A stretch of DNA of 64,000 bases from Obrimoposthia wandeli (Eukaryota), in assembly GCA_977020255.1 (NCBI GenBank), contig CDROCS010000506.1:2294001-2358000 (forward strand). The letters are read 5' to 3'. This document shows positions 37,664 through 53,245 of this stretch, piece after piece (position 1 is the stretch's first letter; every line of letters starts with the position of its first letter). A model generated the notes under the pieces. The model saw nothing but the letters and a program-made list of their open reading frames with translations. It was not told where the DNA came from and ran no database searches. A program made the position numbers and the translations under genes.

Positions 37664-38009
37664 AGAATAGTAGACGCTGTGTGTTATAAAAATAGTGACG
37701 CACAGTGATACTTCTAATCCATCCTATTTATGTTCGCCTCGATCAATATTTATATTATTTATTTTTATTCTCCTCAAATAAAGCAATTCAAGTGCTTAAA
37801 AGCCTCTTTTATCTCATTACCCCTTTCTGATGTTATCGCTTACTAGCGTATATGATATTTGCATCTATTATTTGATCTAATATGCTGGATTGTCGTTGAA
37901 TTGCGATATATAAAATCAACATTGATGATTAACTAGCGTTATACATCTTATATTAGAGTGTTTTTCATTTAATTATGTTCGGGTGCACTCGTTACAATTA
38001 AGGTCATCT

Positions 38010-40787: not shown

Positions 40788-40836
40788 ATCAAGGACGTTA
40801 GCACGATAGAAAGGATGTTAAGTAGATAGGCCAATT

Positions 40837-43800
40837 ATGAATAACCGCCGTTCGAGTGAAGTAACGAACAACAAAAAATCGCGAGTTAAGGTGCTAACGC
40901 TAGTGCCGCTCGCTGTACTTTTGATGTCTGCATTATCTACGCTGTGGTTAATAACACCAACGAAAGAAGTACTGCTTACATTAATTTCTCGCTCAACTTC
41001 GCCGAAGATATCGTTATCATTTTTAAATGTGTTATTAGTTCGAGACCCTAACAATCGTCATATTAAACTGCTCATAGCAAAAAACATCTATCAAACGGGT
41101 GATATCCGTCGTGTCATTGAATTTGTAGAACCTTTGCTTAACGATGCCAACAATAATCAAGATTGGCGAGCTTACTCCTTATATTTAGAAGCCGTGGTCG
41201 AAGGGGGTTATGCGAGAGATGCTAGTTTAAATAGCTATTCAAATCAAAAATTAGACTTATTGTTTAAGAATATCAAACATATTCCGGATGCCAAAGTCGC
41301 GCGTCGATTTGCAGATGTAGCCTTGTCGCTTAACATGCCTGCTCAAGCGTTGAATATATTAAGGCCTCATATAGCAAGTCTTGAGACAAGTTATGAAGAA
41401 CTTATCTCTTTGGCGTTGCAAGTATCCGATTACGACACTGCTTTGACGTTGTTATCTGCTAGTTCAGGGTTATCTTATGATGATACAGGTGTGATAAGAG
41501 GTGCGCATGTTAATACTCAATACAATAAAGGCATAGCTGATAAATTAGCTCGTATACATCAAATATATCGTTGGCAGGGGAGCACGACCAAGGCTCTTGA
41601 AATTAGTTTGTTGCTTGCGGCGCATGAGCCAACGGAGCAAGTATTGCGGGATGGGCTTTCTGAAGCGAAAGCGTTAGGCGATATTTACCATGAGGGGCTT
41701 TTTTATAACCAATTAGCGGTCCGTTCTCAGTTAACTACCGCTGAATATGCACCTTGGTTAAATGCCCTCGAAAAATCTCAAGGAACAGAAGCTGCGCTAA
41801 CTACGTTGGATAAGCTACGTCAAGAAAACCCTGGTAATCGCCAGTTTATTATTGAGTTAGCGCGGCTATACAGTTATTCCAGTACTCACGAACAGGTCAT
41901 CAGTTTACACCCACAGCTTAAAGTTAATGGTCCCTTAATCGCCTCAGAAACACGAAGGTTTGCCAATGCTTACATCATGTTGAATCAACCTGATGATGCT
42001 CTGGCTGTGTTAATTGAACCAACAGATTGGTTAGATGCCGATGACGAATATTTGCAGATGGTGGCTGTATTAGCGTGGGATTTAAGCAATAAAGAAGTGG
42101 CGTTAGCCAGCCAACATGCGTTAATTAAACGTTCAGATAAGCACATAGACGTGTACCGCTATGTTCGGTTACATAGGCCTTTTAGCGAATATGATGTGCC
42201 TGAATTAGTGGCCTTATATCGTCGAACAAAAAATAAGACGTTACTGCTGGAAGCGATGAACGTGGTTGCTAACGGAGTGACTAAAAAGTTAACTTCGCCG
42301 CATGAAGTGGTTAGCAATGAGTATGGAATGGGAAAATTGCTCGATTTAGCATTACAGAACAAAACCATGAATGAGCGCGCTGATGTATATTATTATCGCG
42401 CCATGTACGCAATACAACAGAGTCGGATGCGTGACGGACACCGATTTTTTAGATTATCATTAAATGCAGAACCGTTATTTATACCGACAATCAATAGCTA
42501 TATTTGGTGGGCGATTGAGATCCAAGATCGCAATACGATGCGCGAACTTTATGATAACTATAGTTTTGTACTAAAAGATCATTCCGCATTAGGGTTAACA
42601 TTTGCAACCCTTAGCCAAGAGTTAGCTAATCATCAACATGCGCGCTATTGGTATCAAGAGTATTTATTGGTGGATGAGAAAACGGATATTACAGCGTTGA
42701 TCCACTATGCTTCACTGTTAACCGATATGAAGTTATACGAGCAAGCGAATCGATTACGTTTTTATATTGCCATCCATCATGCTTCATCGCTTGCTGAATT
42801 GCCTAATCATGCAGTATTCCAACATGCTTTGGTCGGTTTGTCGGCTGGTGATGCTGTGGCTGCCAACTTAGCGACAAAGCAAGTATTAATACAGCCGTCA
42901 GCCAGTTCGGTAGCGCAATTTTTTGAATATCAATTGATGACAGGCAATACTGATGCCACACGGTTTTGGTATCAACGGACATCATTATCACATTACGCGC
43001 TACCTAAAAGTCAGTTACTGGCGATAGAAAAGCATAATCAGGTACCTGCACAAGCTGAAGACATAACCACGAGGAGAGATTCTGCATGGATACCAGCATT
43101 ACAATATGCAGATAATGCGAATCAAATACCCTCTCAAATTTCGAGTTGGCAGGTTGAAGGTGGGTTTTATCCACAATTCACAAATTACCGATCGGCATTA
43201 CGCAGTCAATATATAGCCAATACAGCATGGGATATTAATACCGTTCGCTTAGATTATTATCAGCTTGCTAAATTTGGCAACTGGCAACTCAGTAATTATT
43301 ATCAGACCGCGGATAGCACGGGTGTCTTTGCTAGCGATAACATCGAAGATGAATTTCGATTAAGAGGATTAGCGCATTATTGGTTTAATCGAAGTGATTG
43401 GCAGTTTATGTTTGATTTTTCTGAGGGTGTTGGGGAACAGCGACTTGGTCTGAATGTTAATTACAGTACGCAGTTTAATCGACGTTGGCGGTTCGAGCTG
43501 GGAGCAGGGATAAATAATGATATTAGGGCGAGTCAAGCGCTGGCCCTTGCTGGTAGTGACAACGTGGTAAATGCGGGGGCCTTATACCAACCGAGTTACC
43601 GGACTAATGTTGAGTTTAAAGCCAAGTTTCATCAGTTATCGACCCGCTTTGATGACGAGATTGGAGATGGTTGGAGTGGTTCTCTACGTGTCACTGAACA
43701 GTTATTTTTTAATTCACCTGCTTGGCAGATATATGCGGATTATAGTATGCATGAGGTCAATTTAAGTTCTACGCCATTATTAGGTATTAACGACTGGCAC

Positions 43801-44124
43801 CAAGGTCTGACGCCGCTAACCAGCAGTGACTTTATTAGTCCACGTTATCAACGACTCGCACTTGGACAACGATTTTATCGGGGGGCGGTCGGTATATCCG
43901 ATTCGATTAAACAGTTTAATTATTTATCTCAACCTCGTTATTGGTTCGATAGCGCTGTTGGCTATGACCTTGTTACTTCACAGCCTGTGTTATTACTGGG
44001 TTTGGGACTAGGCTGGCCAATCTTTGGTCATGATGAATTGTATTTTAATGTCGATTGGCAAAGCCAAGATCGCAATGGCGAAGAAGCAGAAAAAGTGTCA
44101 ATTGGTTACTTTTATTCTTTTTAA
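40837..44124 (+). CDS. pelB: PelB: TPR-containing outer-membrane export protein
   Basis: N-terminal hydrophobic segment, long helical-repeat region, C-terminal amphipathic beta strands ending GYFYSF; position between pelA and pelC. Confidence 0.85.
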   Translation: MNNRRSSEVTNNKKSRVKVLTLVPLAVLLMSALSTLWLITPTKEVLLTLISRSTSPKISLSFLNVLLVRDPNNRHIKLLIAKNIYQTGDIRRVIEFVEPLLNDANNNQDWRAYSLYLEAVVEGGYARDASLNSYSNQKLDLLFKNIKHIPDAKVARRFADVALSLNMPAQALNILRPHIASLETSYEELISLALQVSDYDTALTLLSASSGLSYDDTGVIRGAHVNTQYNKGIADKLARIHQIYRWQGSTTKALEISLLLAAHEPTEQVLRDGLSEAKALGDIYHEGLFYNQLAVRSQLTTAEYAPWLNALEKSQGTEAALTTLDKLRQENPGNRQFIIELARLYSYSSTHEQVISLHPQLKVNGPLIASETRRFANAYIMLNQPDDALAVLIEPTDWLDADDEYLQMVAVLAWDLSNKEVALASQHALIKRSDKHIDVYRYVRLHRPFSEYDVPELVALYRRTKNKTLLLEAMNVVANGVTKKLTSPHEVVSNEYGMGKLLDLALQNKTMNERADVYYYRAMYAIQQSRMRDGHRFFRLSLNAEPLFIPTINSYIWWAIEIQDRNTMRELYDNYSFVLKDHSALGLTFATLSQELANHQHARYWYQEYLLVDEKTDITALIHYASLLTDMKLYEQANRLRFYIAIHHASSLAELPNHAVFQHALVGLSAGDAVAANLATKQVLIQPSASSVAQFFEYQLMTGNTDATRFWYQRTSLSHYALPKSQLLAIEKHNQVPAQAEDITTRRDSAWIPALQYADNANQIPSQISSWQVEGGFYPQFTNYRSALRSQYIANTAWDINTVRLDYYQLAKFGNWQLSNYYQTADSTGVFASDNIEDEFRLRGLAHYWFNRSDWQFMFDFSEGVGEQRLGLNVNYSTQFNRRWRFELGAGINNDIRASQALALAGSDNVVNAGALYQPSYRTNVEFKAKFHQLSTRFDDEIGDGWSGSLRVTEQLFFNSPAWQIYADYSMHEVNLSSTPLLGINDWHQGLTPLTSSDFISPRYQRLALGQRFYRGAVGISDSIKQFNYLSQPRYWFDSAVGYDLVTSQPVLLLGLGLGWPIFGHDELYFNVDWQSQDRNGEEAEKVSIGYFYSF

Positions 44125-44138
44125 TTAAGGAGATATAA

Positions 44139-44669
44139 ATGAAGTGGTCATTAATCTTAGTAATGCTGTTAACTTTATCGGCATGTTCTAGTCATCGTAT
44201 ACCAGATAGTCCTCCGTTAGCAGCGTCGGCAGCATGGGTTATCATGCCGTTAGAAAATAATTCAAGTACGCCTCTGGCAGCAGAAAAAGCGGAGAGAATA
44301 TTAAGTTCACAATTATATCGAAAAGGTATTAAAGCGGTTGTTTATCCGAAAGCGCCGCTTAATAGCTTAACGGATATTCTCGATCAAACAGTCAAATATA
44401 AACATGCTGAGGCATGGCTTATCACATCTCCAGCAGACTATATTATTAGCGGATCTGTTGAAGAATGGCGTTATAAAAATGGCCTCGATGCAGAACCCGC
44501 TGTTGGCGTTACATTAGAAATTAAAGACGCGAAAACGCATAAAGTAATATGGAGAGCCAGTGCCAGTCGAGTCGGTTGGGGTAGGGAAAGTGTCAGTGGT
44601 GCTGGGATTGAGGTGATCGATACGTTACTCGAGGGGATAAAAATAACTCCGTCTGGGGCGGTGAAATAA
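44139..44669 (+). CDS. pelC: PelC lipoprotein
   Basis: Lipobox LSAC, MPLENNSSTPLAAE, GSVEEWRYKNGLDAEPAVG, GWGRES. Confidence 0.92.
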   Translation: MKWSLILVMLLTLSACSSHRIPDSPPLAASAAWVIMPLENNSSTPLAAEKAERILSSQLYRKGIKAVVYPKAPLNSLTDILDQTVKYKHAEAWLITSPADYIISGSVEEWRYKNGLDAEPAVGVTLEIKDAKTHKVIWRASASRVGWGRESVSGAGIEVIDTLLEGIKITPSGAVK

Positions 44670-44686
44670 CATGATAGTGTTTATTT

Positions 44687-46024
44687 ATGGATAAATTATG
44701 GTGCGGTTTCATCAAACCTCTGCAAGGGGCGCGTTTGGCGTGGATGGAAATCATGTTTATTACTTTGATTTCTGCGGCGAGTTGGGTGTATTTTTATCCC
44801 TTTCCGCAGGGGTTAAAGGCGCATTATTTCTTTTGGCCTTTGCTGGGACCGTTACTGGTTGCTTTACGTTATGGGTTTGCTAAAGGTTTCATTTGTACAA
44901 TGTTAATGACCATCATATTTGTGTTTGTGGCAAAAGATGATGGTGTCTTGCTCTCATTCCCTTTTTCTTTGGTTGTTGGCTTGTTTTTCATGGTTATGGC
45001 CGCCGGTGAGTTTCGAGATCATTGGCAACGTCGTATTGATAAATGTGTACTCGAGCATAAACGTATGCAACAAAAATTAGCCGACTTTACTAAAAATTAT
45101 CATTTACTCAAAGTATCGCATGACCAATTAGAATTACGTCATGTCGGCAAACCTGTCAGTCTTCGTGCAGAAATAAATTCATTGCAGCAACTGGCTCTAC
45201 AGCATAGCGAACGTCGATTAATTCATATTGCCGATCCACTATTGGCCTTACTTGCACATGTCGGTGGGCTACAAGTCGCAGGTATTTATACTGTAATGAA
45301 TGATGATATCGAGCTGCAGCCTAATGCACTCATTGGCGATAAACACAAGCTTGTACTTGATGATCCAATGCTACAAGATATGTTGGAATGTAAAAAACTA
45401 CTCTCCCCGATAACCAGCCATATACCGCATCGTTCACGTTATCAATTATGTATTCCGCTGGTGGATAGTACGGGTAAACTGCAAGCTGTAGTATTAGCTG
45501 AAACAGTGAGGTTTTTTTCATTAACACCCGCGAATGTCGTTTTGCTGTCATTGATTGCTGATAATGCAGCTGATTTATTAAGTCATGATTTATTAACGCC
45601 AGTGTTGATGGAATATCAACATGATCTGTTTATCCGTTATATCTACCGCGCGCATTATAATCACCGAGAGTATGCCATGGATAGTTGCTTAATCATTTTA
45701 GATGACTGCAGTGGTCTACATCATAACGAATTACATAGCTTAATTAATTACCGCCGAGGTGGTGATGTATATTGGGTATGCGAACCACCTAATCAGCCAG
45801 CGCGGCTGATGGTTTTATTGCCACTCACCTCGATGGCAGATAGTCTGCTATACATTTCCCGAGTAAAAGAAGTCTTGTTTGAGAATTTGGGAGAACGCAG
45901 TAATGATATCGATATTTTAGGGCCTTTTTCATTTGATAAAGAGCAAGATAATATTGATGAACTCATTAAAAAATGGGGGCCTAATGATGACAATACTACT
46001 GTTTCTACTGGCGCTTTCGGCTGA
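44687..46024 (+). CDS. pelD: PelD: c-di-GMP receptor (TM, GAF, degenerate GGDEF)
   Basis: LVALRYG, GEFRDHW, LLKVSHDQLE; I-site RxxD retained as RGGD (45755-45766), followed by LMVLLPLT. Confidence 0.9.
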   Translation: MDKLWCGFIKPLQGARLAWMEIMFITLISAASWVYFYPFPQGLKAHYFFWPLLGPLLVALRYGFAKGFICTMLMTIIFVFVAKDDGVLLSFPFSLVVGLFFMVMAAGEFRDHWQRRIDKCVLEHKRMQQKLADFTKNYHLLKVSHDQLELRHVGKPVSLRAEINSLQQLALQHSERRLIHIADPLLALLAHVGGLQVAGIYTVMNDDIELQPNALIGDKHKLVLDDPMLQDMLECKKLLSPITSHIPHRSRYQLCIPLVDSTGKLQAVVLAETVRFFSLTPANVVLLSLIADNAADLLSHDLLTPVLMEYQHDLFIRYIYRAHYNHREYAMDSCLIILDDCSGLHHNELHSLINYRRGGDVYWVCEPPNQPARLMVLLPLTSMADSLLYISRVKEVLFENLGERSNDIDILGPFSFDKEQDNIDELIKKWGPNDDNTTVSTGAFG

Positions 46025-46961
46025 ATTATGGAGCTTCTACGTTTTACTCGGTGCTGATTTTTCAGCGCTAAATTGGGGGCGTTATGCCGCAATACATCTT
46101 GGTGCTTGCGGTGTATTTACTTGGCGTGCTTGGTTATTATTACCGCATGGTTATAAATTCCCAGTATGGCGTAATATTTGTTTTTTATTCAGCTTTTCAT
46201 TTTTCATTCCGCTACTTGGTATGTTTGGTGGCGGCGCTTTATTGGTTGCTTTGTATCGCCCCAAAGTCAATGTTCCTGTTACTTGGGGGGAGTGTGAACC
46301 CACTTCACTTTCCTCCTTATCAACACAATTAGATGTGAATAGTACTCAGCATTATAGTGCTGGGGCACTTCGCGATATATTAATGCATTGTCTGGATCCT
46401 GAACCTCGTTTACAGGCAGTTAATTTTGCTTGTCATTTATCACCGCAACAAGCGATACCAATTCTACAATTAGCGTTAAAGGATTTATCTGATGATGTCC
46501 GACTGTTCTCTTATGCTTCTTTGGAAGAAATGGAAGCTAAAATTAATGTATCAATTACCCAGCTTAAATCGCAATTCGTGTCTCAAAAAAAGGCCGGTAT
46601 AGCGTTCAATATTGCCGAACAGTACTGGGAGTTATGTTATCTCGGCCTCGCTGAAAGCGTGTTGTATTCACACTATCTAGAGCAAGCATCTTGGTACCTT
46701 ACTCGTGCAAATCAGATTACTGAGAGTGCCACGAGTAATTTATTACTTGGACGTATAATGCTAGCGCAGAAAAAACCAGAGCAAGCATTAGGTTACTTAA
46801 CTCGAGCATTAGATGGCGGATTATTGACTCAGCAAGTATTACCTTATCTTGCCGAAGCTAGTTTTGCATTGGGTAACTATGAGTTGACTAAATACTACAT
46901 AACGCAGTTACAAACCAGTAAACATAATCCGTTACAACAACTAAAGGAATATTGGCTATGA
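45984..46961 (+). CDS. pelE: PelE inner-membrane TPR-like protein
   Basis: N-terminal TM helices, ALKDLSDDVRLFSY, YWELCYLGLA; probable ATG 45984 (ORF track starts 45933). Confidence 0.87.
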   Translation: MMTILLFLLALSAELWSFYVLLGADFSALNWGRYAAIHLGACGVFTWRAWLLLPHGYKFPVWRNICFLFSFSFFIPLLGMFGGGALLVALYRPKVNVPVTWGECEPTSLSSLSTQLDVNSTQHYSAGALRDILMHCLDPEPRLQAVNFACHLSPQQAIPILQLALKDLSDDVRLFSYASLEEMEAKINVSITQLKSQFVSQKKAGIAFNIAEQYWELCYLGLAESVLYSHYLEQASWYLTRANQITESATSNLLLGRIMLAQKKPEQALGYLTRALDGGLLTQQVLPYLAEASFALGNYELTKYYITQLQTSKHNPLQQLKEYWL

Positions 46962-48472
46962 AGAACGATGTCGATATTTGTTTGTTGCTTGAAGGCACTT
47001 ATCCCTATGTGCGGGGGGGCGTTTCTAGTTGGATGCATCAAATTATTAAAGGTTTACCTGAATTTTCTTTTCATATCATCTTTTTGGGCAGTGAACCGAC
47101 GTTATATAGCAAGCCTGCTTATGATCTTCCTGATAATGTGGTCGGATTTGAAATACATTATTTATTACCCCTCGAGGATAATAAAATACCAACACCGACC
47201 GTTGGAGACCGCCGTTTATTTGATTCCTGGCAACGTTTTTTAACTTTTTTTAACAGTGCCAAAGAACCGATACCAAGTGAACTGCTTGGTGAGATTGTCG
47301 AATTTTTAGGAAAAAAAAATAAATTAAGTTTGACTGATTTTCTTAATAGTCGAGCTTCATGGGACGTGCTTATTGAGCATTATCAACAACAGCAAACTAA
47401 TGAGTCCTTTGTCGATTTTTTTTGGACATATCGTAATATTTATCAAGCGCTCTTTGTGTTGGCTAGTATCTCTCAATCACTGCCAAATGCGCGGGCTTAT
47501 CATAGTATTTCTACGGGTTATGCAGGATTCTTGGGGGCGTGTTGTCGACAGAAAAGTAACCGACCTTTTTTAATCACTGAGCATGGCATTTATACCAAAG
47601 AACGAAAAATAGATTTATCTCAAGTCAGTTGGATCACAGATAAACATGATTTGTTGGATGTCAGTATGCATAAAAGTATGGATGCAACTCGGCAAACTTG
47701 GACTCGGTTTTTTGAGCAATTGGGCATGTCTGCTTACCATCAGGCCGATCGTGTCGTTGCGCTTTTTGAAGGTAATCGGCAGCGGCAACATGCAGATGGA
47801 GCGACGAGTGATAAAACTCAGGTTATTGCTAATGGTATTGATATAGAACGCTTTTCATCCGCATATGAACAGCGCCTTGATATCCCCCCTATGGTTGTAG
47901 GTTTAGTCGGAAGAGTCGTGCCAATTAAAGATATCAAAACCTTTATCCGTACATTAAAAAGCGCAGTAGAAAAAATACCGACCATAGAGGGCTGGATCAT
48001 TGGGCCCGCGGAAGAAAATGAGATTTATGCGCATGAGTGTAGATTATTAATTAGCAGTTTAGGGTTGGAAGACCGAGTTAAAATGTTAGGAAGCCAAAAT
48101 GTAGCCGAAATTATGCCCAAGCTTGGCATCATGATGTTAACTTCGATCAGTGAGGCACAACCTTTGGTACTACTTGAGGCCATGGCGTCAGGGATCCCTT
48201 GTATTGCAACGGATGTCGGAGCGTGCAGTGAAATTCTTAATGGCATGGTAGGTGAGGATGCGAGTCTTGGTTCCTGCGGTATGATAATCCCAATCGCAAG
48301 CCCCACTGTCGGTGCCAAGGCCATTGTTAAATTATTCTCTGATGCTGGAATATGGCGTAAAACTGGCGATATAGGTAAGACGAGAGTCGCTAAATATTAC
48401 GATCAAGAGTTGATGTACGATGCATATCGACATTTATATAAAGGAGCGATTGATGGCGGGTATCGGCTTTGA
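46958..48472 (+). CDS. pelF: PelF GT4 glycosyltransferase
   Basis: LLEGTYPYVRGGVSSW, STGYAG, TEHGIYTKER, GRVVPIKDIKTF, LTSISEAQPL, TDVG; ATGA overlap with the pelE stop. Confidence 0.95.
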   Translation: MKNDVDICLLLEGTYPYVRGGVSSWMHQIIKGLPEFSFHIIFLGSEPTLYSKPAYDLPDNVVGFEIHYLLPLEDNKIPTPTVGDRRLFDSWQRFLTFFNSAKEPIPSELLGEIVEFLGKKNKLSLTDFLNSRASWDVLIEHYQQQQTNESFVDFFWTYRNIYQALFVLASISQSLPNARAYHSISTGYAGFLGACCRQKSNRPFLITEHGIYTKERKIDLSQVSWITDKHDLLDVSMHKSMDATRQTWTRFFEQLGMSAYHQADRVVALFEGNRQRQHADGATSDKTQVIANGIDIERFSSAYEQRLDIPPMVVGLVGRVVPIKDIKTFIRTLKSAVEKIPTIEGWIIGPAEENEIYAHECRLLISSLGLEDRVKMLGSQNVAEIMPKLGIMMLTSISEAQPLVLLEAMASGIPCIATDVGACSEILNGMVGEDASLGSCGMIIPIASPTVGAKAIVKLFSDAGIWRKTGDIGKTRVAKYYDQELMYDAYRHLYKGAIDGGYRL

Positions 48473-49823
48473 ACTCAGAAAAATATTAAAGCGTAATACG
48501 TTATTATCCATTGTTGAGGCATATGGATTAGCGGGTTTGATTAGTTCAGGCCCTTGGGTATTATCAATTTTAGCCCTGCTGGTGATTGGGATTGTTAGTT
48601 TAGGTACATTCGAGTCTTATGTGATAACTCAATTTTTGATACTCGTGACCTATTTAATGGCGGGTTCACTGATCATCAGTGGATTATTTCAATTACTGTT
48701 AACGCGTTTTATCTCTGATTTAATTTATGCGAAACAAGAACAGCGCATTGTGCCTAATCTGTTAGGTGCGATGTTCGTGACAACGGTATTATCCGCGATT
48801 TTAGCGGGGGGGATTTTGGCTATAGCGGTAGAAATAAATCCACTCACTAAAGTTATTATACTTGCTGCGTTTGTTATTCTTTGTAATCAATGGTTGGTGT
48901 TAATATTTCTGAGTGGGTTAAAAGAATATTACCGAATATTTTTTACGATCGCGGGGTGTTATGGGTTAATGGTGGTTTTATGTATCCTTGTTCCCCCATT
49001 TGGATTGACTGGATTCATGGCTATTTTTACTTTTTGCCAAGCATTGCTCACGTTCATTTTTCTCTATCATGTGATTCGACAATTTCCTGCAAAACGATTA
49101 ATTTTATTTGAATTTATTGATCATGAAAATGTATTTTTCTCGTTGTTGTTTTGTGGTTTTTTTTATAATTTAGGCGTATGGCTGGATAAATTTGTATTTT
49201 GGTCAAGAGATGAAACATCGCATCAAGTATTTAGTTTTTTACGCGCTTCTTATATCTATGACTTACCTATTTTTATTGCTTACCTTGCGATAGTCCCCGG
49301 TATGGCTGTTTTTATTATGCGCATGGAAACTGATTTTTCCCAAGCCTGCTTGAAGTTTTACAATACCGTACGTGAAGGCGGGACGTTGGATGAGATCTAC
49401 CAGCTAAAAGATAACATGGTACTTACTTGCCGGCACAGCATGTATGAAATATTTAAAGTACAGGGAATGACGTTAGTATTGTTATTGTTGTGGAGTGAGG
49501 ATATTTTACAGGCGTTGGACATTGATCTTGCCTATCTGCATTTACTTTATGTCGATCTTATTGGTGTTAGTTTACAAGTGTTAGTCATGGCCATATTAAA
49601 TATCATGTATTACCTAGATAAGCGTTATGCAGCATTAGCATTAACGTTATTTATGGCGGTGAGTAACTTTGTCTTAGCGCATATCAGCATTGAAATAGGA
49701 CCACTATTCTATGGTTATGGTTTTACGTTGACCATGTTACTGACAACGCTTATCGGCTTCATCATGTTAGATAAACAGTTTGCTGACTTAGAATACCAAA
49801 CATTTATGCTGCAGCGCTCATAA
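48453..49823 (+). CDS. pelG: PelG inner-membrane transporter
   Basis: MAGIGFELRK N-terminus, SSGPW, GVWLDKFVFW, YDLPIF, RMETDF; AAGGAG RBS before ATG 48453. Confidence 0.95.
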   Translation: MAGIGFELRKILKRNTLLSIVEAYGLAGLISSGPWVLSILALLVIGIVSLGTFESYVITQFLILVTYLMAGSLIISGLFQLLLTRFISDLIYAKQEQRIVPNLLGAMFVTTVLSAILAGGILAIAVEINPLTKVIILAAFVILCNQWLVLIFLSGLKEYYRIFFTIAGCYGLMVVLCILVPPFGLTGFMAIFTFCQALLTFIFLYHVIRQFPAKRLILFEFIDHENVFFSLLFCGFFYNLGVWLDKFVFWSRDETSHQVFSFLRASYIYDLPIFIAYLAIVPGMAVFIMRMETDFSQACLKFYNTVREGGTLDEIYQLKDNMVLTCRHSMYEIFKVQGMTLVLLLLWSEDILQALDIDLAYLHLLYVDLIGVSLQVLVMAILNIMYYLDKRYAALALTLFMAVSNFVLAHISIEIGPLFYGYGFTLTMLLTTLIGFIMLDKQFADLEYQTFMLQRS

Positions 49824-50708
49824 ACAACTCCATCGGTAGCTATCATCAAGCGCGAGAGGGAGTATTAAGGTGCTAAACTTTCTATTATTAGCATCTAAGC
49901 ATAAGGCATCGCGAGCATCTTGGTCATTAATATATATTTTCTTGTATTCAGCATTAAAAACAGGTTTTTCTGCGTCAATGAAGGGTGTTAGTAGTGCGCA
50001 TTCCTTATACTGAAAGCATTGTTCATTAACAGCGAAATCATAATGTGATACGAGATCGCTAACTTGGTCTAAATTATTTTTAAGGCCAATAGACAGGCCT
50101 TGCTTATGGGCTTCGCTGGCTAACCAGATGTTATAGTCGAGCTGATCAATGGCTGTGAAGCTAAAGCCAGGGTTGTTGGTATAACCATCGACATTGTCTG
50201 GTTCCACGCCATCACAGGCTTTATCTTTGGCGGTGATTAAGCGCGCTTTCATAATGTCTCTTACATTGTCAGAACGAACATCTATCCAACGCTCTCCTGG
50301 CCATTCATCAAGTGGATTGCCAAGATCTGATGCGGTAAATTCGTTTGCATCATCACGCCAATCTTCGTAAGTGCCTGCGGAGAAATAACAAATGACCTTT
50401 TTATTTTGCTCATGTAATGAGGTTATCTGCTGCATGTTAGTATCAAATAAATCAACATCATAAATATTAACGGAGTAACTGGTATTAATTGTTCCTTGCA
50501 GTTGCCATTGCCAAGTATCCATGACTGCGGGCTTGTACCATGGCTCGGGGCTCGGGTCTGGATTGGGAATAGGCTCCGGATCAGGATTGGGTGCTGGAAT
50601 TGGTATGTCAGGCTCCTCAGGTATCGAGGATACATTATCATCACTTGAACAACTGCCAAACCCGATAATCATTAACGCGCTTAAGGTAATTACAAGGACA
50701 TTTCTCAT
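49818..50708 (-). CDS. GH114 endo-alpha-1,4-polygalactosaminidase-like lipoprotein (Ega3-like)
   Basis: Lipobox FGSC (Cys20), Pro-rich linker, WQWQLQG, YDVDLFD, ICYFSAGTYEDWRDD, WPGERWIDVR, DGVEPDNVDGY, GLKN, AVNEQC, VFNAEY. Confidence 0.9.
   Translation of the reverse strand: MRNVLVITLSALMIIGFGSCSSDDNVSSIPEEPDIPIPAPNPDPEPIPNPDPSPEPWYKPAVMDTWQWQLQGTINTSYSVNIYDVDLFDTNMQQITSLHEQNKKVICYFSAGTYEDWRDDANEFTASDLGNPLDEWPGERWIDVRSDNVRDIMKARLITAKDKACDGVEPDNVDGYTNNPGFSFTAIDQLDYNIWLASEAHKQGLSIGLKNNLDQVSDLVSHYDFAVNEQCFQYKECALLTPFIDAEKPVFNAEYKKIYINDQDARDALCLDANNRKFSTLILPLALDDSYRWSCL
50541..50621 (-). repeat. Pro-X low-complexity linker (PEEPDIPIPAPNPDPEPIPNPDPSPEP)
   Basis: Residues 30-56 of the GH114 ORF; imperfect PNPDP duplication. 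Confidence 0.9.
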
Positions 50709-50710
50709 CG

Positions 50711-53245
50711 TTATTTATCCGCTTGATCAACAGTAAAGGTACGACCATTATGATCAACATCGGTAGTAATAAGGCGTTGCCCGCCATAAAATATACCGCC
50801 AGTTATACCCGTTGCTCTTGCTTTAATCGCATCGTCGGCAAATAACGTCACGCTATTGTTATTCCGGTTCCAGGTACCGCGTAGATTAGCTGACTTGGCT
50901 GCTAATTTTTCTTCGGTCATTACCCCGATAGTATAATAATCTAAGTTAATAATTGGCAGGGTCAGTAATTGATTGAAATAATCGGTGACTGCATGCAGCC
51001 AATCGTATTGCAAGGTAAGTCCGTTACCATAATTATGTAAGTTACTAATATGGAAATAGTGTGGCGAAGGACTAAAAGTCAGCATATGCCTAAAGGTAGT
51101 TTCTGCTTCAGCGGCTAATATGCCATTATAATTACGTGGCTGGCAGATAGCACCAGCAATATGACAAGGATTATCTCCAGCCTCAATGTGACGTTCATAA
51201 AATATATAGTTGTACTCGTCGGTTAATTCCTCTGGTGTGGTGACATTATAAAATAAAGAGGTGGGATAACGCGGCAGTAATAAAATATTAGTGTCTGGCA
51301 CATAAGAAGGAATATTTTGGTTTGGACGTGATATATCAGAGGCCATATAACGAATACCTAGTGTGGCCATACTTTCAAATAATTCGGTATTCCGGCCCTC
51401 CGGATAATCAACAAAGATGGACGATGCTTCGTTGGAACTTTCGGAATCTTCTAAGCCAGAATGATTACCCGTTACTAAAACTTGAGATGCATTGGTAAAC
51501 CCTGGAAGGTTCAGACGGAGCCAAAGGATTAGGTTATCACTTATTTCTTGGAAGGCTATATCATAAGTTGCACCTGAACTTTTATACATATCCCGATGGC
51601 TGAAAGTATGATTTAAAAATCGGAAATTATTTTTATATTTGGTTATTGTATCGGTAAGTGGTTCTTGGCTCGTATATCGAATGATTAAACGTGGGCGTCT
51701 GAGTTCTCGGCCGGTTTCAGTACTATAAATTTGAATGGCTTGGTCTGCGTCTGCCATGATCATAAGACCCGCTTTAGGAATATTAGTTTGTTGCCATTGA
51801 TTTACTAGTGATGTGATGTTGGCTTTGATGCGGTTTTTAGCAATTGTGTAGCTTATACAACTTGAAGGATCAAAATCACCACCTTTATTTATCCAACTTC
51901 TTTGTACACTATTGTGTGTCCAGTTGGCTTGATCTTCCCATTTTTGTTGTATTAAGCATATACGTCCTGTACCTGTCACTACTTCACCACGCGCGACTTT
52001 TACTCTCAATTTTAAAACTGCTTTCGAAGATAGGTTGTGAACATTGTCTGGTAATTCAAAAGTAACGAGTGCTCGCGCTTGCTGTGTACTTGAATTATTT
52101 ATATTCAGTACTTTACTTTCAGCATAACTACTACTTTGTCTTGCTGAACTAATGTAAGTATCAGAGATGGATTCTAATATCACTTTCGCTGGCGTGTTTA
52201 CTGAAGCGCCAGCACCGTTAAATACCATATCTAGTTTAAAGTTAGTTAAATTTGAATATGTCGAATTAAATTGATTGTTCGCTGCGACGATATTCTCTAT
52301 ATCATTTGCGGTGTTGCGGTAAATTTTATAATCGTTAGTTATATTTTTTAGTGGATCCCAAATTTCGTCGGCAAGATAGAGATCATCAATGTGTGCTGCG
52401 AGATAAACTTGGCGGGAACCAATAAATACACCTTGTGTGGCAAAGTTTAAAAATTCGTAATTTAATAACTGTGAATAAATCAAATACCAAGCATTGGTGA
52501 TACTTGAAAATAGTACTTCGCGACCGTCGTTATAGATTAATTTTGATACCATTATTTTACCCGATGCTTTGTCAGTAAGCAGTGGTGTAACGACCGGCCC
52601 ATTTGGATCTAGACTCGGTGTTGTGATTATGGTGTAGTCAGTGATAGGGAGGGTATTGGCTTTATTTACATATTCAAAGATGTCATTGTTGTTAATGGGT
52701 AACTGCCAGACGCCGGTATAAGAAAACCCCGCGACCAACGAATTCATATCCATCCCATAGTCTAGATCGTAAGTGACTCGGAAATATTCACCTGACATCG
52801 GATACCCAGATAATACCGATTCTCGGACTTTAAAATCACGCTCATAAGCATGTAATCGCTTCCATTCTTCTAGTGTGAATGCAGAGCCGTTAACGTTACC
52901 GTTGCCCAAATAATACAGCGAACTGTCGGTTAAAATTATACCGTTGTAATTACCTTGGTCATTTGTCACTAACACATCATCTGTGAGTTCGGTTTGTGTC
53001 GCGTCTAAAACATCATAAGGAACGCCCATTTCATCGAGCATATCATCGATTAAATCTAAACCTTGATCTTGCTCTGCAGTACCAGTAGTGATCACTAAAA
53101 CTTTTAAGTCCACGATAGGTGTACTACTTGCTGATAAAGGTAATAACAATAAGATCGGCAGAATAAATAACCAAGGTGGTGTTTTTAATATGCGCGCGAC
53201 TTTACTGGATGCTTTATTGAGTAACATACTGTGACTCCAATACAT
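50711..53245 (-). CDS. Secreted Agd3 (CE18)-like carbohydrate deacetylase with inserted DNRLRE-like domain
   Basis: Signal-peptide-like WLFILPILLLLPLSAS; GVPYDVL and YNGIIL N-domain; YLAAHIDDLYL (HIDD at 52382-52393), FLNHTFSH (HTFSH at 51596-51610), LLPRYPTSLFYN, PHYFHISNL. Family recognised from motif order, not from a search; true start may be ATG 53227. Confidence 0.78.
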   Translation of the reverse strand: MYWSHSMLLNKASSKVARILKTPPWLFILPILLLLPLSASSTPIVDLKVLVITTGTAEQDQGLDLIDDMLDEMGVPYDVLDATQTELTDDVLVTNDQGNYNGIILTDSSLYYLGNGNVNGSAFTLEEWKRLHAYERDFKVRESVLSGYPMSGEYFRVTYDLDYGMDMNSLVAGFSYTGVWQLPINNNDIFEYVNKANTLPITDYTIITTPSLDPNGPVVTPLLTDKASGKIMVSKLIYNDGREVLFSSITNAWYLIYSQLLNYEFLNFATQGVFIGSRQVYLAAHIDDLYLADEIWDPLKNITNDYKIYRNTANDIENIVAANNQFNSTYSNLTNFKLDMVFNGAGASVNTPAKVILESISDTYISSARQSSSYAESKVLNINNSSTQQARALVTFELPDNVHNLSSKAVLKLRVKVARGEVVTGTGRICLIQQKWEDQANWTHNSVQRSWINKGGDFDPSSCISYTIAKNRIKANITSLVNQWQQTNIPKAGLMIMADADQAIQIYSTETGRELRRPRLIIRYTSQEPLTDTITKYKNNFRFLNHTFSHRDMYKSSGATYDIAFQEISDNLILWLRLNLPGFTNASQVLVTGNHSGLEDSESSNEASSIFVDYPEGRNTELFESMATLGIRYMASDISRPNQNIPSYVPDTNILLLPRYPTSLFYNVTTPEELTDEYNYIFYERHIEAGDNPCHIAGAICQPRNYNGILAAEAETTFRHMLTFSPSPHYFHISNLHNYGNGLTLQYDWLHAVTDYFNQLLTLPIINLDYYTIGVMTEEKLAAKSANLRGTWNRNNNSVTLFADDAIKARATGITGGIFYGGQRLITTDVDHNGRTFTVDQADK

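What the first reader, a model, noticed from the sequence alone, without database searches (positions are those of the whole stretch)
51671..52189. About 170-aa DNRLRE/CBM96-like domain inserted inside the deacetylase catalytic region
Seen: between FNGAG and EPLTDTITKYKNNFRFLNHTFSH lies a beta-rich segment (SDTYISS...ARALVTFELP...AVLKL...ANWTH...WINKGGDF...NITSLVNQWQQ...GLMI...YSTE...RPRLII) with the pattern of DNRLRE domains. It separates the Asp motif from the His-His motif, so it must sit in a loop of the barrel rather than at a terminus. Known: some DNRLRE domains are classed as CBM96 and bind alginate. Inference: the insert may target the enzyme to a second, possibly anionic, polymer or surface - an architecture I do not recognise from described Agd3 proteins.
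Basis: partly seen in the sequence, partly recalled or inferred. Interest (0 to 1): 0.7.

Follow-up and report, generated by a model that had tools for sequence, protein, structure and literature searches.

The report
Binding-type domain nested inside biofilm deacetylase
A Moritella-type bacterium carries a biofilm-sugar deacetylase (a relative of fungal Agd3) with a complete 180-residue binding-type domain spliced into a loop beside its active site; this add-on is common but optional in bacterial relatives, no paper I could search describes it, and in Moritella it is swapped between strains.

Summary
ORF 50711-53245 (-), 844 aa, is an Agd3/CE18-type deacetylase with an N-terminal CBM87 domain. 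It lies next to a GH114 gene and a complete pelABCDEFG operon. Residues 348-529 form an autonomous DNRLRE-type beta-sandwich: NCBIfam NF033679 scores 52-58 bits against a cutoff of 34, and the fold matches two solved DNRLRE-type carbohydrate-binding modules (8WAB, Z 20; CBM96 founder 7VBO, Z 17). The domain sits directly after barrel strand beta2, between the Asp-Asp and His-x3-His motifs. Fungal Agd3 has a 64-residue helical "beta2-insertion" at this site.

The architecture is not rare. Among 120 relatives the loop holds 5-36 residues in 39, one such domain in about 67, and two in tandem in 10. A small clade has an unrelated domain there. Presence or absence changes at least 8 times on the family tree.

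In Moritella the insert is a hypervariable, recombining block. Flanks are 86-93% identical while inserts are 34-52% identical, with synonymous divergence of 1.5 against 0.23.

The ligand is unknown, and net charge is not conserved, so the "anionic polymer" idea is untested. No paper in the searchable library describes this nested domain, although databases annotate it automatically. I class it as a new variant of a known kind, of moderate interest.

The parts
50711..53245 (-). Agd3/CE18-like polysaccharide deacetylase gene, 844 aa
   Evidence: ORF. Pfam PF25115 59.2 bits and PF25116 53.7 bits, both against a 27.6 cutoff. AF2 model pLDDT 92.5, pTM 0.86. VIA Z 33.5, rmsd 2.7 over 559 residues to Agd3 6NWZ.
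53126..53245 (-). Probable Sec signal peptide (aa 1-40; basic n-region, WLFILPILLLLPL core, SAS before the likely cleavage site)
   Evidence: Read from the sequence. pLDDT is below 50 for aa 1-38. No signal-peptide predictor was available.
52430..53113 (-). [quoted passage not shown]
   Evidence: Pfam CBM87_Agd3 matches aa 45-151. Secondary structure and the alignment to 6NWZ support the wider span.
52205..52429 (-). First part of the CE18 barrel (aa 273-347): strand with CM1 Asp287-Asp288 (52382-52387), a hairpin, helix 313-329, and strand beta2 339-342
   Evidence: (D287 and D288 invariant in 121 sequences).
51659..52204 (-). Nested DNRLRE/CBM96-like beta-sandwich with its two short linkers (aa 348-529); the HMM core is aa 362-522 (51680-52162)
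   Evidence: NF033679 at 52-58 bits. The insert-only AF2 model has pLDDT 93.2 and pTM 0.89. VIA Z 20.4 to 8WAB and 17.0 to 7VBO. Homologue alignments define the boundaries.
51857..51958 (-). Conserved Cys430...Cys463 pair inside the insert (94% conserved each), probably a disulfide
   Evidence: Conservation among 67 single-insert homologues. The disulfide itself is inferred.
50888..51658 (-). Second part of the CE18 barrel (aa 530-786): CM2 His546-x3-His550 (51596-51610), invariant Arg659 (51269-51271, candidate CM3), CM4 His732 (51050-51052)
   Evidence: The equivalence of Arg659 with Agd3 R613 was not shown residue by residue.
50714..50887 (-). C-terminal beta-rich domain (aa 787-844)
   Evidence: DSSP strands 789-839. 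The model aligns to 6NWZ out to residue 839.
49818..50708 (-). GH114 endo-alpha-1,4-polygalactosaminidase (Ega3-like), immediately downstream on the same strand
   Evidence: Pfam PF03537, 298 bits.
37983..49823 (+). pelABCDEFG operon, convergent with the Agd3-like/GH114 pair
   Evidence: Pfam hits for PelB barrel, PelD GGDEF, PelF (DUF3492 plus GT1) and PelG. PelA matches 9CGY at E 8e-164 with its CE21 motifs intact.

Best explanation
The gene encodes a secreted Agd3-type (CE18) metal-dependent de-N-acetylase. Together with the adjacent GH114 hydrolase, it most likely modifies the alpha-1,4-GalNAc polymer made by the neighbouring pel operon.

A complete, independently folding DNRLRE/CBM96-type beta-sandwich (aa 348-529) is spliced into the loop after barrel strand beta2, on the catalytic face of the barrel. 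Fungal Agd3 carries a 64-residue helical 'beta2-insertion' at the same site, and that insertion walls its active-site cleft.

The most likely role of the domain is an optional binding or targeting module at the rim of the cleft. It would hold the enzyme on a glycan or a surface, either the substrate polymer itself or a second, strain-variable polymer. It is not needed for catalysis.

Shown: the domain's identity, the insertion site, its autonomy, its dispensability in close relatives, its patchy distribution, and its hypervariability and recombination in Moritella. Inferred: that it binds a ligand, what that ligand is, and the enzyme's substrate.
For: Identity and position:
- NF033679 scores above cutoff.
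- The excised domain folds on its own at pLDDT 93.
- It matches two solved DNRLRE-type carbohydrate-binding modules far above background: 8WAB (Z 20.4, 162 of 176 residues) and 7VBO (Z 17.0), with the next hit at Z 12. The Nature paper PMC12611786 reports that UniProtKB classes 8WAB as a DNRLRE-domain protein.
- The order is beta2 (339-342), insert, helix 529-536, then the strand carrying His546. This is the same site as Agd3's beta2-insertion. The whole-protein pTM of 0.86 suggests a fixed orientation.

Optional module:
- Junctions are clean: FNGxGA | insert | (D/E)P-LT.
- Close sister proteins carry a 6-12 residue loop instead (P0008/P0010, P0088, P0097).
- The loop holds 0, 1 or 2 copies across 121 sequences.
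- The body tree requires 8-11 changes of presence or absence.

Under selection:
- dN/dS is 0.23 in the insert.
- A Cys pair and four Trp are conserved.

A variable partner rather than a passive wall:
- Moritella PE36 against a Moritella MAG: insert dS 1.5 against 0.23 in the flanks. Nucleotide divergence is 30-44% across the insert and mostly 2-10% in the rest of the gene.
- The window against metagenome contig L080: 1-3% at the gene ends and 41-56% over aa ~300-530.
- The insert tree rejects the clade that the flanks support (p-AU 0.0002).
- Insert net charge runs from +7 to -9 within the clade.

Context:
- GH114 and pelA-G are adjacent.
- The same linkage recurs in Vibrio, Hahellaceae, Nitrosomonadaceae and Methylococcales.
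- It was already noted for Moritella in PMC7229062.
Against: - There is no binding data.
- The query's insert misses Pfam's CBM96 threshold and has no detectable sequence similarity to 7VBO or 8WAB.
For the same reason the distance and orientation of the insert relative to the metal site are unmeasured.
- DNRLRE-like folds also serve in protein complexes, for example the Bacteroidota BAM subunit at Z 12 and TGF-beta prodomains at Z 10-11.
- Net charge is not conserved, so no single ligand class is implied.
- Hypervariability was seen only in the Moritella clade. In actinobacterial clades the inserts diverge about as much as the flanks.
Confidence: 0.55

Rival explanations
1. The domain is a passive cleft wall. 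It does what Agd3's helical beta2-insertion does, capping the loops after beta3 and beta4 and deepening or lengthening the substrate groove, and it has no ligand-binding site of its own.
For: It occupies the same insertion site as the Agd3 beta2-insertion, which forms one face of the cleft. The high pTM suggests rigid packing on the barrel. The body columns that differ most between insert-bearing and insert-less proteins fall in the loops after beta3 (aa 551-557) and beta4 (aa 602-608). That signal is weak and is confounded by the loops' general variability.
Against: Many active-looking homologues manage with a 5-6 residue loop. A wall that lines a groove for one conserved substrate should not be the most variable and most recombined part of the gene. 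Two tandem copies in one loop are hard to explain as a wall.
Confidence: 0.2
2. The domain is a protein-docking module. It would attach the deacetylase to another component, such as the Pel export machinery or an outer-membrane or cell-surface protein, rather than to a glycan.
For: DNRLRE-like sandwiches occur as subunits of Bacteroidota BAM complexes (Z 10-12) and as TGF-beta prodomain arms (Z 9-11) (PMC12611786). Published work shows that P. aeruginosa PelA interacts with PelB and models B. cereus PelA_DA as interacting with PelG.
Against: The two closest structures by a wide margin are carbohydrate-binding modules. Insert-bearing and insert-less enzymes are both found beside pel genes, so the insert does not track the pel machinery. 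Pel partners are conserved, whereas the insert is hypervariable.
Confidence: 0.12
3. The domain is an autoinhibitory lid. It would cover the active site until it is displaced or cleaved, in the manner of a prodomain.
For: It lies on the catalytic face. The fold resembles TGF-beta prodomains and gives weak matches (Z 6-7) to tyrosinase structures (7XIO, 8B74).
Against: Both ends of the domain are joined to the barrel, so proteolytic release would cut the catalytic domain in two. No processing motif is visible. Nothing comparable is known in CE4, CE18, CE21 or CE26 enzymes.
Confidence: 0.05
4. The insert is an artefact, produced by assembly chimera, gene fusion or mis-called ORF.
For: None beyond the fact that the window comes from a bacterial contig inside a very large mixed assembly.
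Against: The same architecture, with the same junctions, occurs in dozens of independent genomes and metagenomes across Gammaproteobacteria and Actinomycetota. The reading frame is uninterrupted. The whole protein is modelled confidently.
Confidence: 0.01

Closest known systems
Aspergillus fumigatus Agd3 (CE18 + CBM87; PDB 6NWZ; PMC7229062)
   Same: It has the same three-domain body: CBM87-type alpha/beta/alpha domain, (beta/alpha)7 deacetylase barrel and C-terminal beta domain. The model matches at Z 33.5 with rmsd 2.7 over 559 residues. The CM1 Asp-Asp, CM2 His-x3-His and CM4 His are conserved. It is partnered with a GH114 enzyme. Both proteins have an insertion after barrel strand beta2.
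   Different: Agd3's beta2-insertion is 64 residues of three short helices. Here the loop holds a 182-residue autonomous beta-sandwich. Sequence identity to Agd3 is only about 20%. The host is bacterial and the gene sits beside a pel operon rather than in a fungal GAG cluster.
CBM96 founder TM6-N4 of the Defluviitalea alginate lyase (PDB 7VBO; PMC9971899), and the chondroitin-sulfate-binding module 8WAB
   Same: They share the DNRLRE-type beta-sandwich fold over nearly the whole domain (Z 17.0 and 20.4; 160-162 residues aligned). The CBM96 paper itself links 7VBO to NF033679.
   Different: Those modules are parts of modular polysaccharide lyases and both bind acidic glycans. Here the domain is nested inside a catalytic barrel. 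It shows no detectable sequence similarity to either structure. It misses the Pfam CBM96 threshold. Its ligand is unknown.
Bacterial Agd3 homologues described by Bamford et al. 2020, Moritella included
   Same: This gene belongs to that group. The paper already reports Moritella homologues, linkage to GH114 genes, and Pel-like outer-membrane genes nearby.
   Different: The paper's text describes a 'three-domain configuration' and does not mention a nested DNRLRE/CBM96 domain, its 0/1/2-copy polymorphism or its variability. Its figures could not be seen here.
PelA (CE21) and B. cereus PelA_DA (CE26 + CBM114), the dedicated Pel deacetylases (PMC12022489, PMC13254593)
   Same: They are metal-dependent de-N-acetylases of alpha-1,4-GalNAc polymers with accessory binding domains that extend the substrate groove. 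An intact PelA is encoded in the same locus.
   Different: They belong to different CE families. Their accessory domains flank the barrel and are not nested in the beta2 loop.

Membership tests
CE18 (Agd3-type carbohydrate deacetylase) | Match to the family profile (Pfam PF25115 Agd3_CE) above the curated cutoff | tested here: met
   59.2 bits against 27.6, in two stretches split by the insert.
CE18 (Agd3-type carbohydrate deacetylase) | CM1 Asp-Asp (catalytic base and metal ligand; Agd3 D377/D378) | tested here: met
   D287/D288 align with chain residues 255/256, which are D377/D378. Both are invariant in 121 sequences.
CE18 (Agd3-type carbohydrate deacetylase) | CM2 His-x3-His metal ligands (Agd3 H510/H514) | tested here: met
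   HTFSH at aa 546-550 aligns with Agd3 HTFTH. H546 is invariant. H550 is present here but replaced by A, S or T in 39 of the 120 relatives.
CE18 (Agd3-type carbohydrate deacetylase) | CM3 arginine that coordinates the catalytic base (Agd3 R613) | tested here: inconclusive
   An invariant Arg659 in the P-R-x-P motif is the candidate. No residue-level alignment to R613 was obtained.
CE18 (Agd3-type carbohydrate deacetylase) | CM4 catalytic-acid histidine (Agd3 H668) | tested here: met
   H732 in YFHISN aligns with MFHQAN, chain residue 546, which is H668. It is invariant.
CE18 (Agd3-type carbohydrate deacetylase) | Overall fold and domain order as in 6NWZ, including the CBM87 domain | tested here: met
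   Foldseek E 4.5e-33. VIA Z 33.5 with 559 residues aligned. PF25116 scores 53.7 bits.
CE18 (Agd3-type carbohydrate deacetylase) | Metal-dependent de-N-acetylation of GalNAc-rich polymer | not testable with these tools
   This needs an enzyme assay.
DNRLRE domain (NCBIfam NF033679) | Match to the domain profile above the curated cutoff, over its full length | tested here: met
   52.1 bits in the whole protein and 57.9 bits for the piece, against a cutoff of 34; profile positions 1-163 of 164 are covered.
DNRLRE domain (NCBIfam NF033679) | The name-giving DNRLRE sequence motif | tested here: inconclusive
   There is no literal DNRLRE string. KNRIKA at aa 470-475 resembles it, but I could not verify the equivalence because only the abstract of the defining paper is held.
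CBM96 (CAZy; Pfam PF24517) | Match to the Pfam CBM96 profile above the cutoff | tested here: not met
   The query gives no PF24517 hit at E <= 1, only Disaggr_repeat at 27.7 bits against 33.9. Homologous inserts at the same site do pass: P0006 at 54 bits, P0031 at 101 bits in two copies, P0040 at 41 bits.
CBM96 (CAZy; Pfam PF24517) | Fold of the founding member 7VBO | tested here: met
   Z 17.0, rmsd 3.1, 160 of 182 residues aligned. Foldseek E 2.5e-9.
CBM96 (CAZy; Pfam PF24517) | Detectable sequence similarity to a characterised member | tested here: not met
   phmmer and a 20-sequence profile of inserts find neither 7VBO nor 8WAB at E <= 1-10.
CBM96 (CAZy; Pfam PF24517) | Carbohydrate (alginate) binding | not testable with these tools
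   This needs binding assays. I could not map the binding residues of 7VBO without model coordinates.

The most novel reading that the evidence does not exclude
The nested domain is an exchangeable, diversifying targeting cassette. Strains would swap alleles of it by recombination so that a conserved Pel-modifying deacetylase is tethered to different, strain-specific surface or matrix polymers, or escapes something that recognises the domain. The beta2 loop of CE18 barrels would then be a general docking port that has accepted at least three unrelated inserts: a helical segment in fungi, one or two DNRLRE domains, and an unrelated ~168-residue domain.
Probability: 0.25. Interest if true: 0.65.

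Novelty: new variant of a known kind. Interest (0 to 1): 0.5.

Why it matters
Agd3 and the Pel enzymes are models for how microbes make exopolysaccharides cationic and adhesive. The structural account of CE18 rests on the single fungal enzyme. This finding shows that most of its nearer bacterial relatives carry a full binding-type domain at the very site that shapes the Agd3 cleft. Evolution adds, doubles, replaces and removes that domain cleanly.

That gives a natural experiment, in the form of sister enzymes with and without the module. It can be used to ask how accessory domains set the pattern and location of deacetylation. It also offers a ready-made permissive site for engineering.

The mosaic, fast-evolving insert in Moritella hints that the module meets a variable partner. 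If so, matrix-modifying enzymes could be under the kind of diversifying pressure usually seen in surface structures.

Tried and rejected
- Sequence searches of the insert against solved structures gave only chance hits, using a single sequence, a 20-sequence profile, and a double-insert homologue. The link to 7VBO and 8WAB therefore rests on fold and on the NCBIfam and Pfam profiles.
- I tried to obtain a residue-level alignment of the CM3 arginine with Agd3 by searching the C-terminal half alone. The region did not align.
- I looked for direct or inverted DNA repeats flanking the insert that could mark a mobile element or a deletion mechanism. Only short chance repeats turned up.
- I compared insert-bearing and insert-less proteins column by column to find contact residues on the barrel. 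The top windows are the loops after beta3 and beta4 and part of the CBM87 domain, but these loops are variable anyway, so I do not rely on this.
- Net charge as a clue to an anionic ligand: rejected as a family-wide argument, because insert pI runs from 4.1 to 10.5.
- The model coordinates are not exposed to scripts. No distances, surface electrostatics or groove continuity could be computed.
- I asked whether the ~168-residue insert of P0036/P0038/P0050/P0053 is a divergent DNRLRE domain. The profile-profile probability is 2%, so I treat it as a different domain.
- I did not use the large representative-protein search or the read-mapping tools, because the claims do not rest on absence of relatives or on expression.
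Full report
**What is in the sequence**

The finding's coordinates (51671-52189, minus strand) are aa 353-525 of an 844-residue ORF at 50711-53245. Pfam places Agd3_CE (PF25115, 59.2 bits, cutoff 27.6) in two stretches around this segment, and CBM87_Agd3 (PF25116, 53.7 bits) at the N-terminus. NCBIfam's DNRLRE_dom (NF033679) matches aa 362-522 over essentially the whole profile. It scores 52.1 bits in the protein and 57.9 bits for the excised piece, against a cutoff of 34.

The first 40 residues look like a Sec signal peptide (read from the sequence; pLDDT below 50).

The downstream gene on the same strand is a GH114 enzyme (298 bits). Converging on the pair is a complete pel operon:
- PelA matches 9CGY at E 8e-164.
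- PelB shows its barrel and TPR regions.
- PelD, PelF and PelG have clear Pfam hits.
- PelC and PelE are assigned by position and by tblastn to other pel loci.

PelA keeps its own CE21 deacetylase motifs (HVDGDGF, HTFSH, YYHMYSG) (motif definitions from PMC12022489). The locus therefore encodes two deacetylases and two hydrolases for a GalNAc polymer.

The window is not from a free-standing bacterial assembly. Its genome handle has 1.35 Gb in 6912 contigs, and the window lies at 2.29-2.36 Mb on one contig. The nearest named relatives are Moritella (68% identity). I read this as a Moritella-like bacterium assembled together with a large, probably eukaryotic, genome.

**Where exactly the domain sits**

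Alignment to Agd3 (PDB 6NWZ) gives these pairings, using the chain-to-protein offset of 122 that fits the three motifs that align (CM1, CM2, CM4):
- D287/D288 with Agd3 D377/D378 (CM1)
- H546/H550 with H510/H514 (CM2)
- H732 with H668 (CM4)

An invariant Arg659 is the candidate for CM3, but I could not align it residue by residue.

Agd3 residues about 430-501 correspond to query residues 346-537. According to Bamford et al. 2020, the Agd3 stretch contains a 64-residue "beta2-insertion" of three short helices. It follows barrel strand beta2, caps the loops after beta3 and beta4, and deepens the cleft (PMC7229062). A later paper describes it as an electronegative extension of one face of the groove (PMC13254593).

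In the AlphaFold2 model of the whole protein (pLDDT 92.5, pTM 0.86) the order is:
- strand 339-342
- an all-beta unit, 355-524
- helix 529-536
- strand 542-546, which ends in His546

The DNRLRE unit therefore occupies the very loop that holds Agd3's beta2-insertion, on the catalytic face of the barrel. The body of the model superposes on Agd3 with Z 33.5 and rmsd 2.7 A over 559 residues, so the barrel is predicted to close around the insert.

**What the domain is**

Modelled on its own from an alignment of 20 inserts, aa 348-529 folds confidently (pLDDT 93.2, pTM 0.89). An exhaustive structural comparison with 48,161 PDB representatives gave these hits:
- 8WAB, a chondroitin-sulfate-binding module of a chondroitinase: Z 20.4, rmsd 2.7, 162 of 176 residues
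- 7VBO, the alginate-binding founder of CBM96: Z 17.0, rmsd 3.1, 160 of 182 residues
- a Bacteroidota BAM subunit: Z 12
- TGF-beta-family prodomains: Z 9-11
- generic CBM sandwiches: below Z 8

The CBM96 paper itself ties 7VBO to NF033679 (PMC9971899). A Nature paper reports that UniProtKB classes 8WAB as a DNRLRE-domain protein (PMC12611786).

At the sequence level the link is weaker. The query's insert gets no Pfam CBM96 hit and only a sub-threshold Disaggr_repeat hit. Neither the single sequence nor a profile of inserts finds 7VBO or 8WAB. Homologous inserts at the same site do pass the CBM96 threshold (54, 101 and 41 bits). I therefore call it a DNRLRE-domain member with a CBM96-like fold, not a demonstrated CBM96 member.

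**How common it is**

The word-based search returned 202 relatives, and I aligned the best 120 with the query. The number of residues between the conserved FNGxGA and (D/E)P-LT junctions falls into classes:
- 5-36 residues in 39 proteins
- 55-68 residues in 2
- 166-207 residues in 67
- 222-247 residues in 3
- 369-385 residues in 10

The last class holds two DNRLRE domains in tandem, confirmed by two HMM stretches in P0031.

Among species-representative genomes, 283 stretches encode a relative. I could measure the loop in 76 of the best 78 loci. About 20 carry one DNRLRE-length insert. These are from Moritella, Vibrio sinensis (two copies), V. mytili, Colwellia, Pseudocolwellia, Halothiobacillaceae, Hahellaceae, Acidimicrobiales and other Actinomycetota. 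Three carry the double insert. Most Nitrosomonadaceae, Methylococcales and Chromatiales copies have a 16-27 residue loop.

NCBI already names some members "DNRLRE domain-containing protein" or "Agd3-related carbohydrate deacetylase". The architecture is thus visible in databases. I found no paper that describes it. Searches for Agd3, DNRLRE, CBM96 and CE18 return none that does. The text of Bamford et al. speaks only of a three-domain configuration in the bacterial homologues, Moritella among them.

**It is a clean, optional module**

A tree built from the body alone, with the insert columns removed, needs 11 changes of presence or absence. Well-supported branches alone force at least 8. The direction of each change cannot be told without a root.

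Several sister pairs differ only by the module:
- P0059 (190-residue insert) and P0088 (11 residues)
- P0065 and P0097
- P0057 and P0063/P0064
- the Moritella clade and P0008/P0010 (6 residues)

In P0088 the remaining loop looks like the two linker ends joined.

Because a 5-6 residue loop can bridge the gap, the two anchor points on the barrel must be close. This fits a domain whose ends lie together, though that is an inference.

Across the 67 single-insert proteins, identity in the insert tracks identity in the body (Pearson r 0.83) but is much lower (27% against 51%). A cysteine pair (C430, C463) and four tryptophans (W436, W442, W451, W484) are each conserved in at least 90% of the 67 sequences.

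A small clade (P0036, P0038, P0050, P0053, and the Methylothermaceae locus L013) has about 168 residues in the same loop. These lack the conserved residues, and profile comparison gives only a 2% probability of relationship to the DNRLRE inserts. With Agd3's helical segment, this makes at least three unrelated fillings of one loop.

**The insert is a recombining, hypervariable block in Moritella**

This result was not part of the finding.

Moritella sp. PE36 (L002) against a Moritella MAG (L003):
- The flanks have dN 0.041 and dS 0.233.
- The 182 insert codons, aligned without gaps, have dN 0.348 and dS 1.52, giving dN/dS 0.23.
- A sliding window shows 30-44% nucleotide divergence over roughly the insert plus about 20 residues on each side. 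The rest of the gene is mostly at 2-10%.

The window's gene against metagenome contig L080:
- Divergence is 1-3% at the gene ends, 9-28% in between, and 41-56% over aa ~300-530.
- The neighbouring GH114 proteins are 94% identical.

At the protein level:
- Query against P0002: flanks 86-88% identical, insert 34%.
- P0003 against P0005: flanks 93%, insert 52%.

On a tree of the inserts alone, P0002 groups with P0005 (support 100/99). The clade {query, P0001, P0002}, which the flanks support at 100, is rejected (p-AU 0.0002). I had seen the pairwise identities before running this test, so it was not fully blind.

Raised synonymous divergence and conflicting trees indicate replacement of the block by recombination among old allele lineages, not merely relaxed constraint. 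The dN/dS of 0.23 shows the domain is still under purifying selection.

Insert net charge in this clade runs from +7 (query, pI 9.6) to -9. The body of the enzyme is uniformly acidic, with a mean net charge of -37. GC content dips to 0.34-0.38 over the block, against about 0.40 around it.

Actinobacterial clades do not show the effect. There, inserts and flanks are similarly diverged, for example 86% against 90%. The gene itself is accessory in the genus: I found it in 3 of 13 Moritella species genomes with this query.

**How it most likely works**

Shown:
- a CE18-type enzyme whose alignable catalytic motifs are conserved (the CM3 arginine could not be aligned)
- a binding-module fold nested at the rim-forming loop
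- the module's dispensability in close relatives
- its copy-number variation
- purifying selection on it
- allelic shuffling in one clade

Inferred: the enzyme is exported and, with the GH114 enzyme, acts on the Pel-type alpha-1,4-GalNAc polymer made next door. The nested sandwich is an auxiliary binding or targeting module.

The variability argues against a purely structural wall for a conserved substrate. It favours a partner that differs between strains. Both solved relatives bind acidic glycans, and this allele is basic, so an anionic ligand remains a fair guess for this protein in particular. The family as a whole does not support it.

I put about 0.55 on "binding or targeting module", 0.2 on "passive cleft wall", 0.12 on "protein docking", 0.05 on "autoinhibitory lid", and about 0.01 on artefact.

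**Limits**

Model coordinates could not be read by scripts. The orientation of the domain, the continuity of its groove with the cleft, and its surface electrostatics are all unmeasured. The ligand, the substrate and the cellular location are not established. The hypervariability rests on five or six allele types from one genus.

**Verdict**

It is wrong about rarity, and the ligand remains open. This is a new variant of a known kind: a CE18 deacetylase with a nested, optional, sometimes duplicated DNRLRE/CBM96-like domain at the beta2-insertion site. The variant is widespread in databases but not described in the papers I could search. The unexpected extra is cassette-like diversification in Moritella.

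Noticed in passing
whole window (G000:C506:2294001-2358000): The window's assembly has 1.35 Gb in 6912 contigs, yet this contig is bacterial and Moritella-like. Its nearest named relatives are Moritella sp. PE36 and M. yayanosii at 68-69% identity for this protein. It is probably a symbiont, gut bacterium or contaminant co-assembled with a large eukaryotic genome.
   Followed up: partly
window 51659-52204 versus L002:11021-11566, L003:11036-11581 and L080:850-3378: In Moritella the nested domain is a mosaic, hypervariable block. Its synonymous divergence is 1.5 against 0.23 in the flanks, and nucleotide divergence is 41-56% against 1-3% at the gene ends. The insert tree conflicts with the flank tree (p-AU 0.0002). 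This points to cassette replacement by recombination.
   Followed up: yes
P0036, P0038, P0050, P0053; L013:10991-11488: A Methylothermaceae-type clade carries an unrelated domain of about 168 residues in the same beta2 loop (motif NNDGDLDW...W.E.D; hhalign probability 2% against the DNRLRE inserts). It has no Pfam or NCBIfam hit and its identity is unknown.
   Followed up: partly
A1, column of query H550 (P0058, P0060-P0062, P0065, P0066 and others): In 39 of the 120 relatives (those named by NCBI are Acidimicrobiales) the second histidine of the His-x3-His metal motif is replaced by Ala, Ser or Thr, while the Asp-Asp pair and the first His are kept. These proteins may bind metal differently or be inactive.
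   Followed up: no
window 37983-40787 (+): The PelA of this locus keeps all CE21 deacetylase motifs (HVDGDGF, HTFSH, YYHMYSG). The locus therefore has two deacetylases (CE21 and CE18) and two hydrolases (the PelA hydrolase domain and GH114) for one polymer.
   Followed up: partly
L004 and L011 (Vibrio sinensis NZ_QVMU01000001.1, 52-90 kb): Vibrio sinensis has two insert-bearing Agd3-like genes about 15 kb apart. Both lie in a stretch holding pelA-G-like genes and two PelA-like matches, which suggests a duplicated or compound locus.
   Followed up: no
model mb1452342c863, residues 45-786: The CBM87-plus-barrel body matches the N-terminal and deacetylase domains of human heparan-sulfate N-deacetylase/N-sulfotransferase NDST1 (8CCY: Z 25.4, 433 residues aligned). 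This match is far stronger than the matches to CE4 enzymes (Z 14-16).
   Followed up: no
13 Moritella species genomes (G001-G013): The Agd3-like gene was found in only 3 of 13 Moritella species genomes with this query, so it is an accessory gene in the genus. I did not check whether the pel operon is absent from the same genomes.
   Followed up: partly
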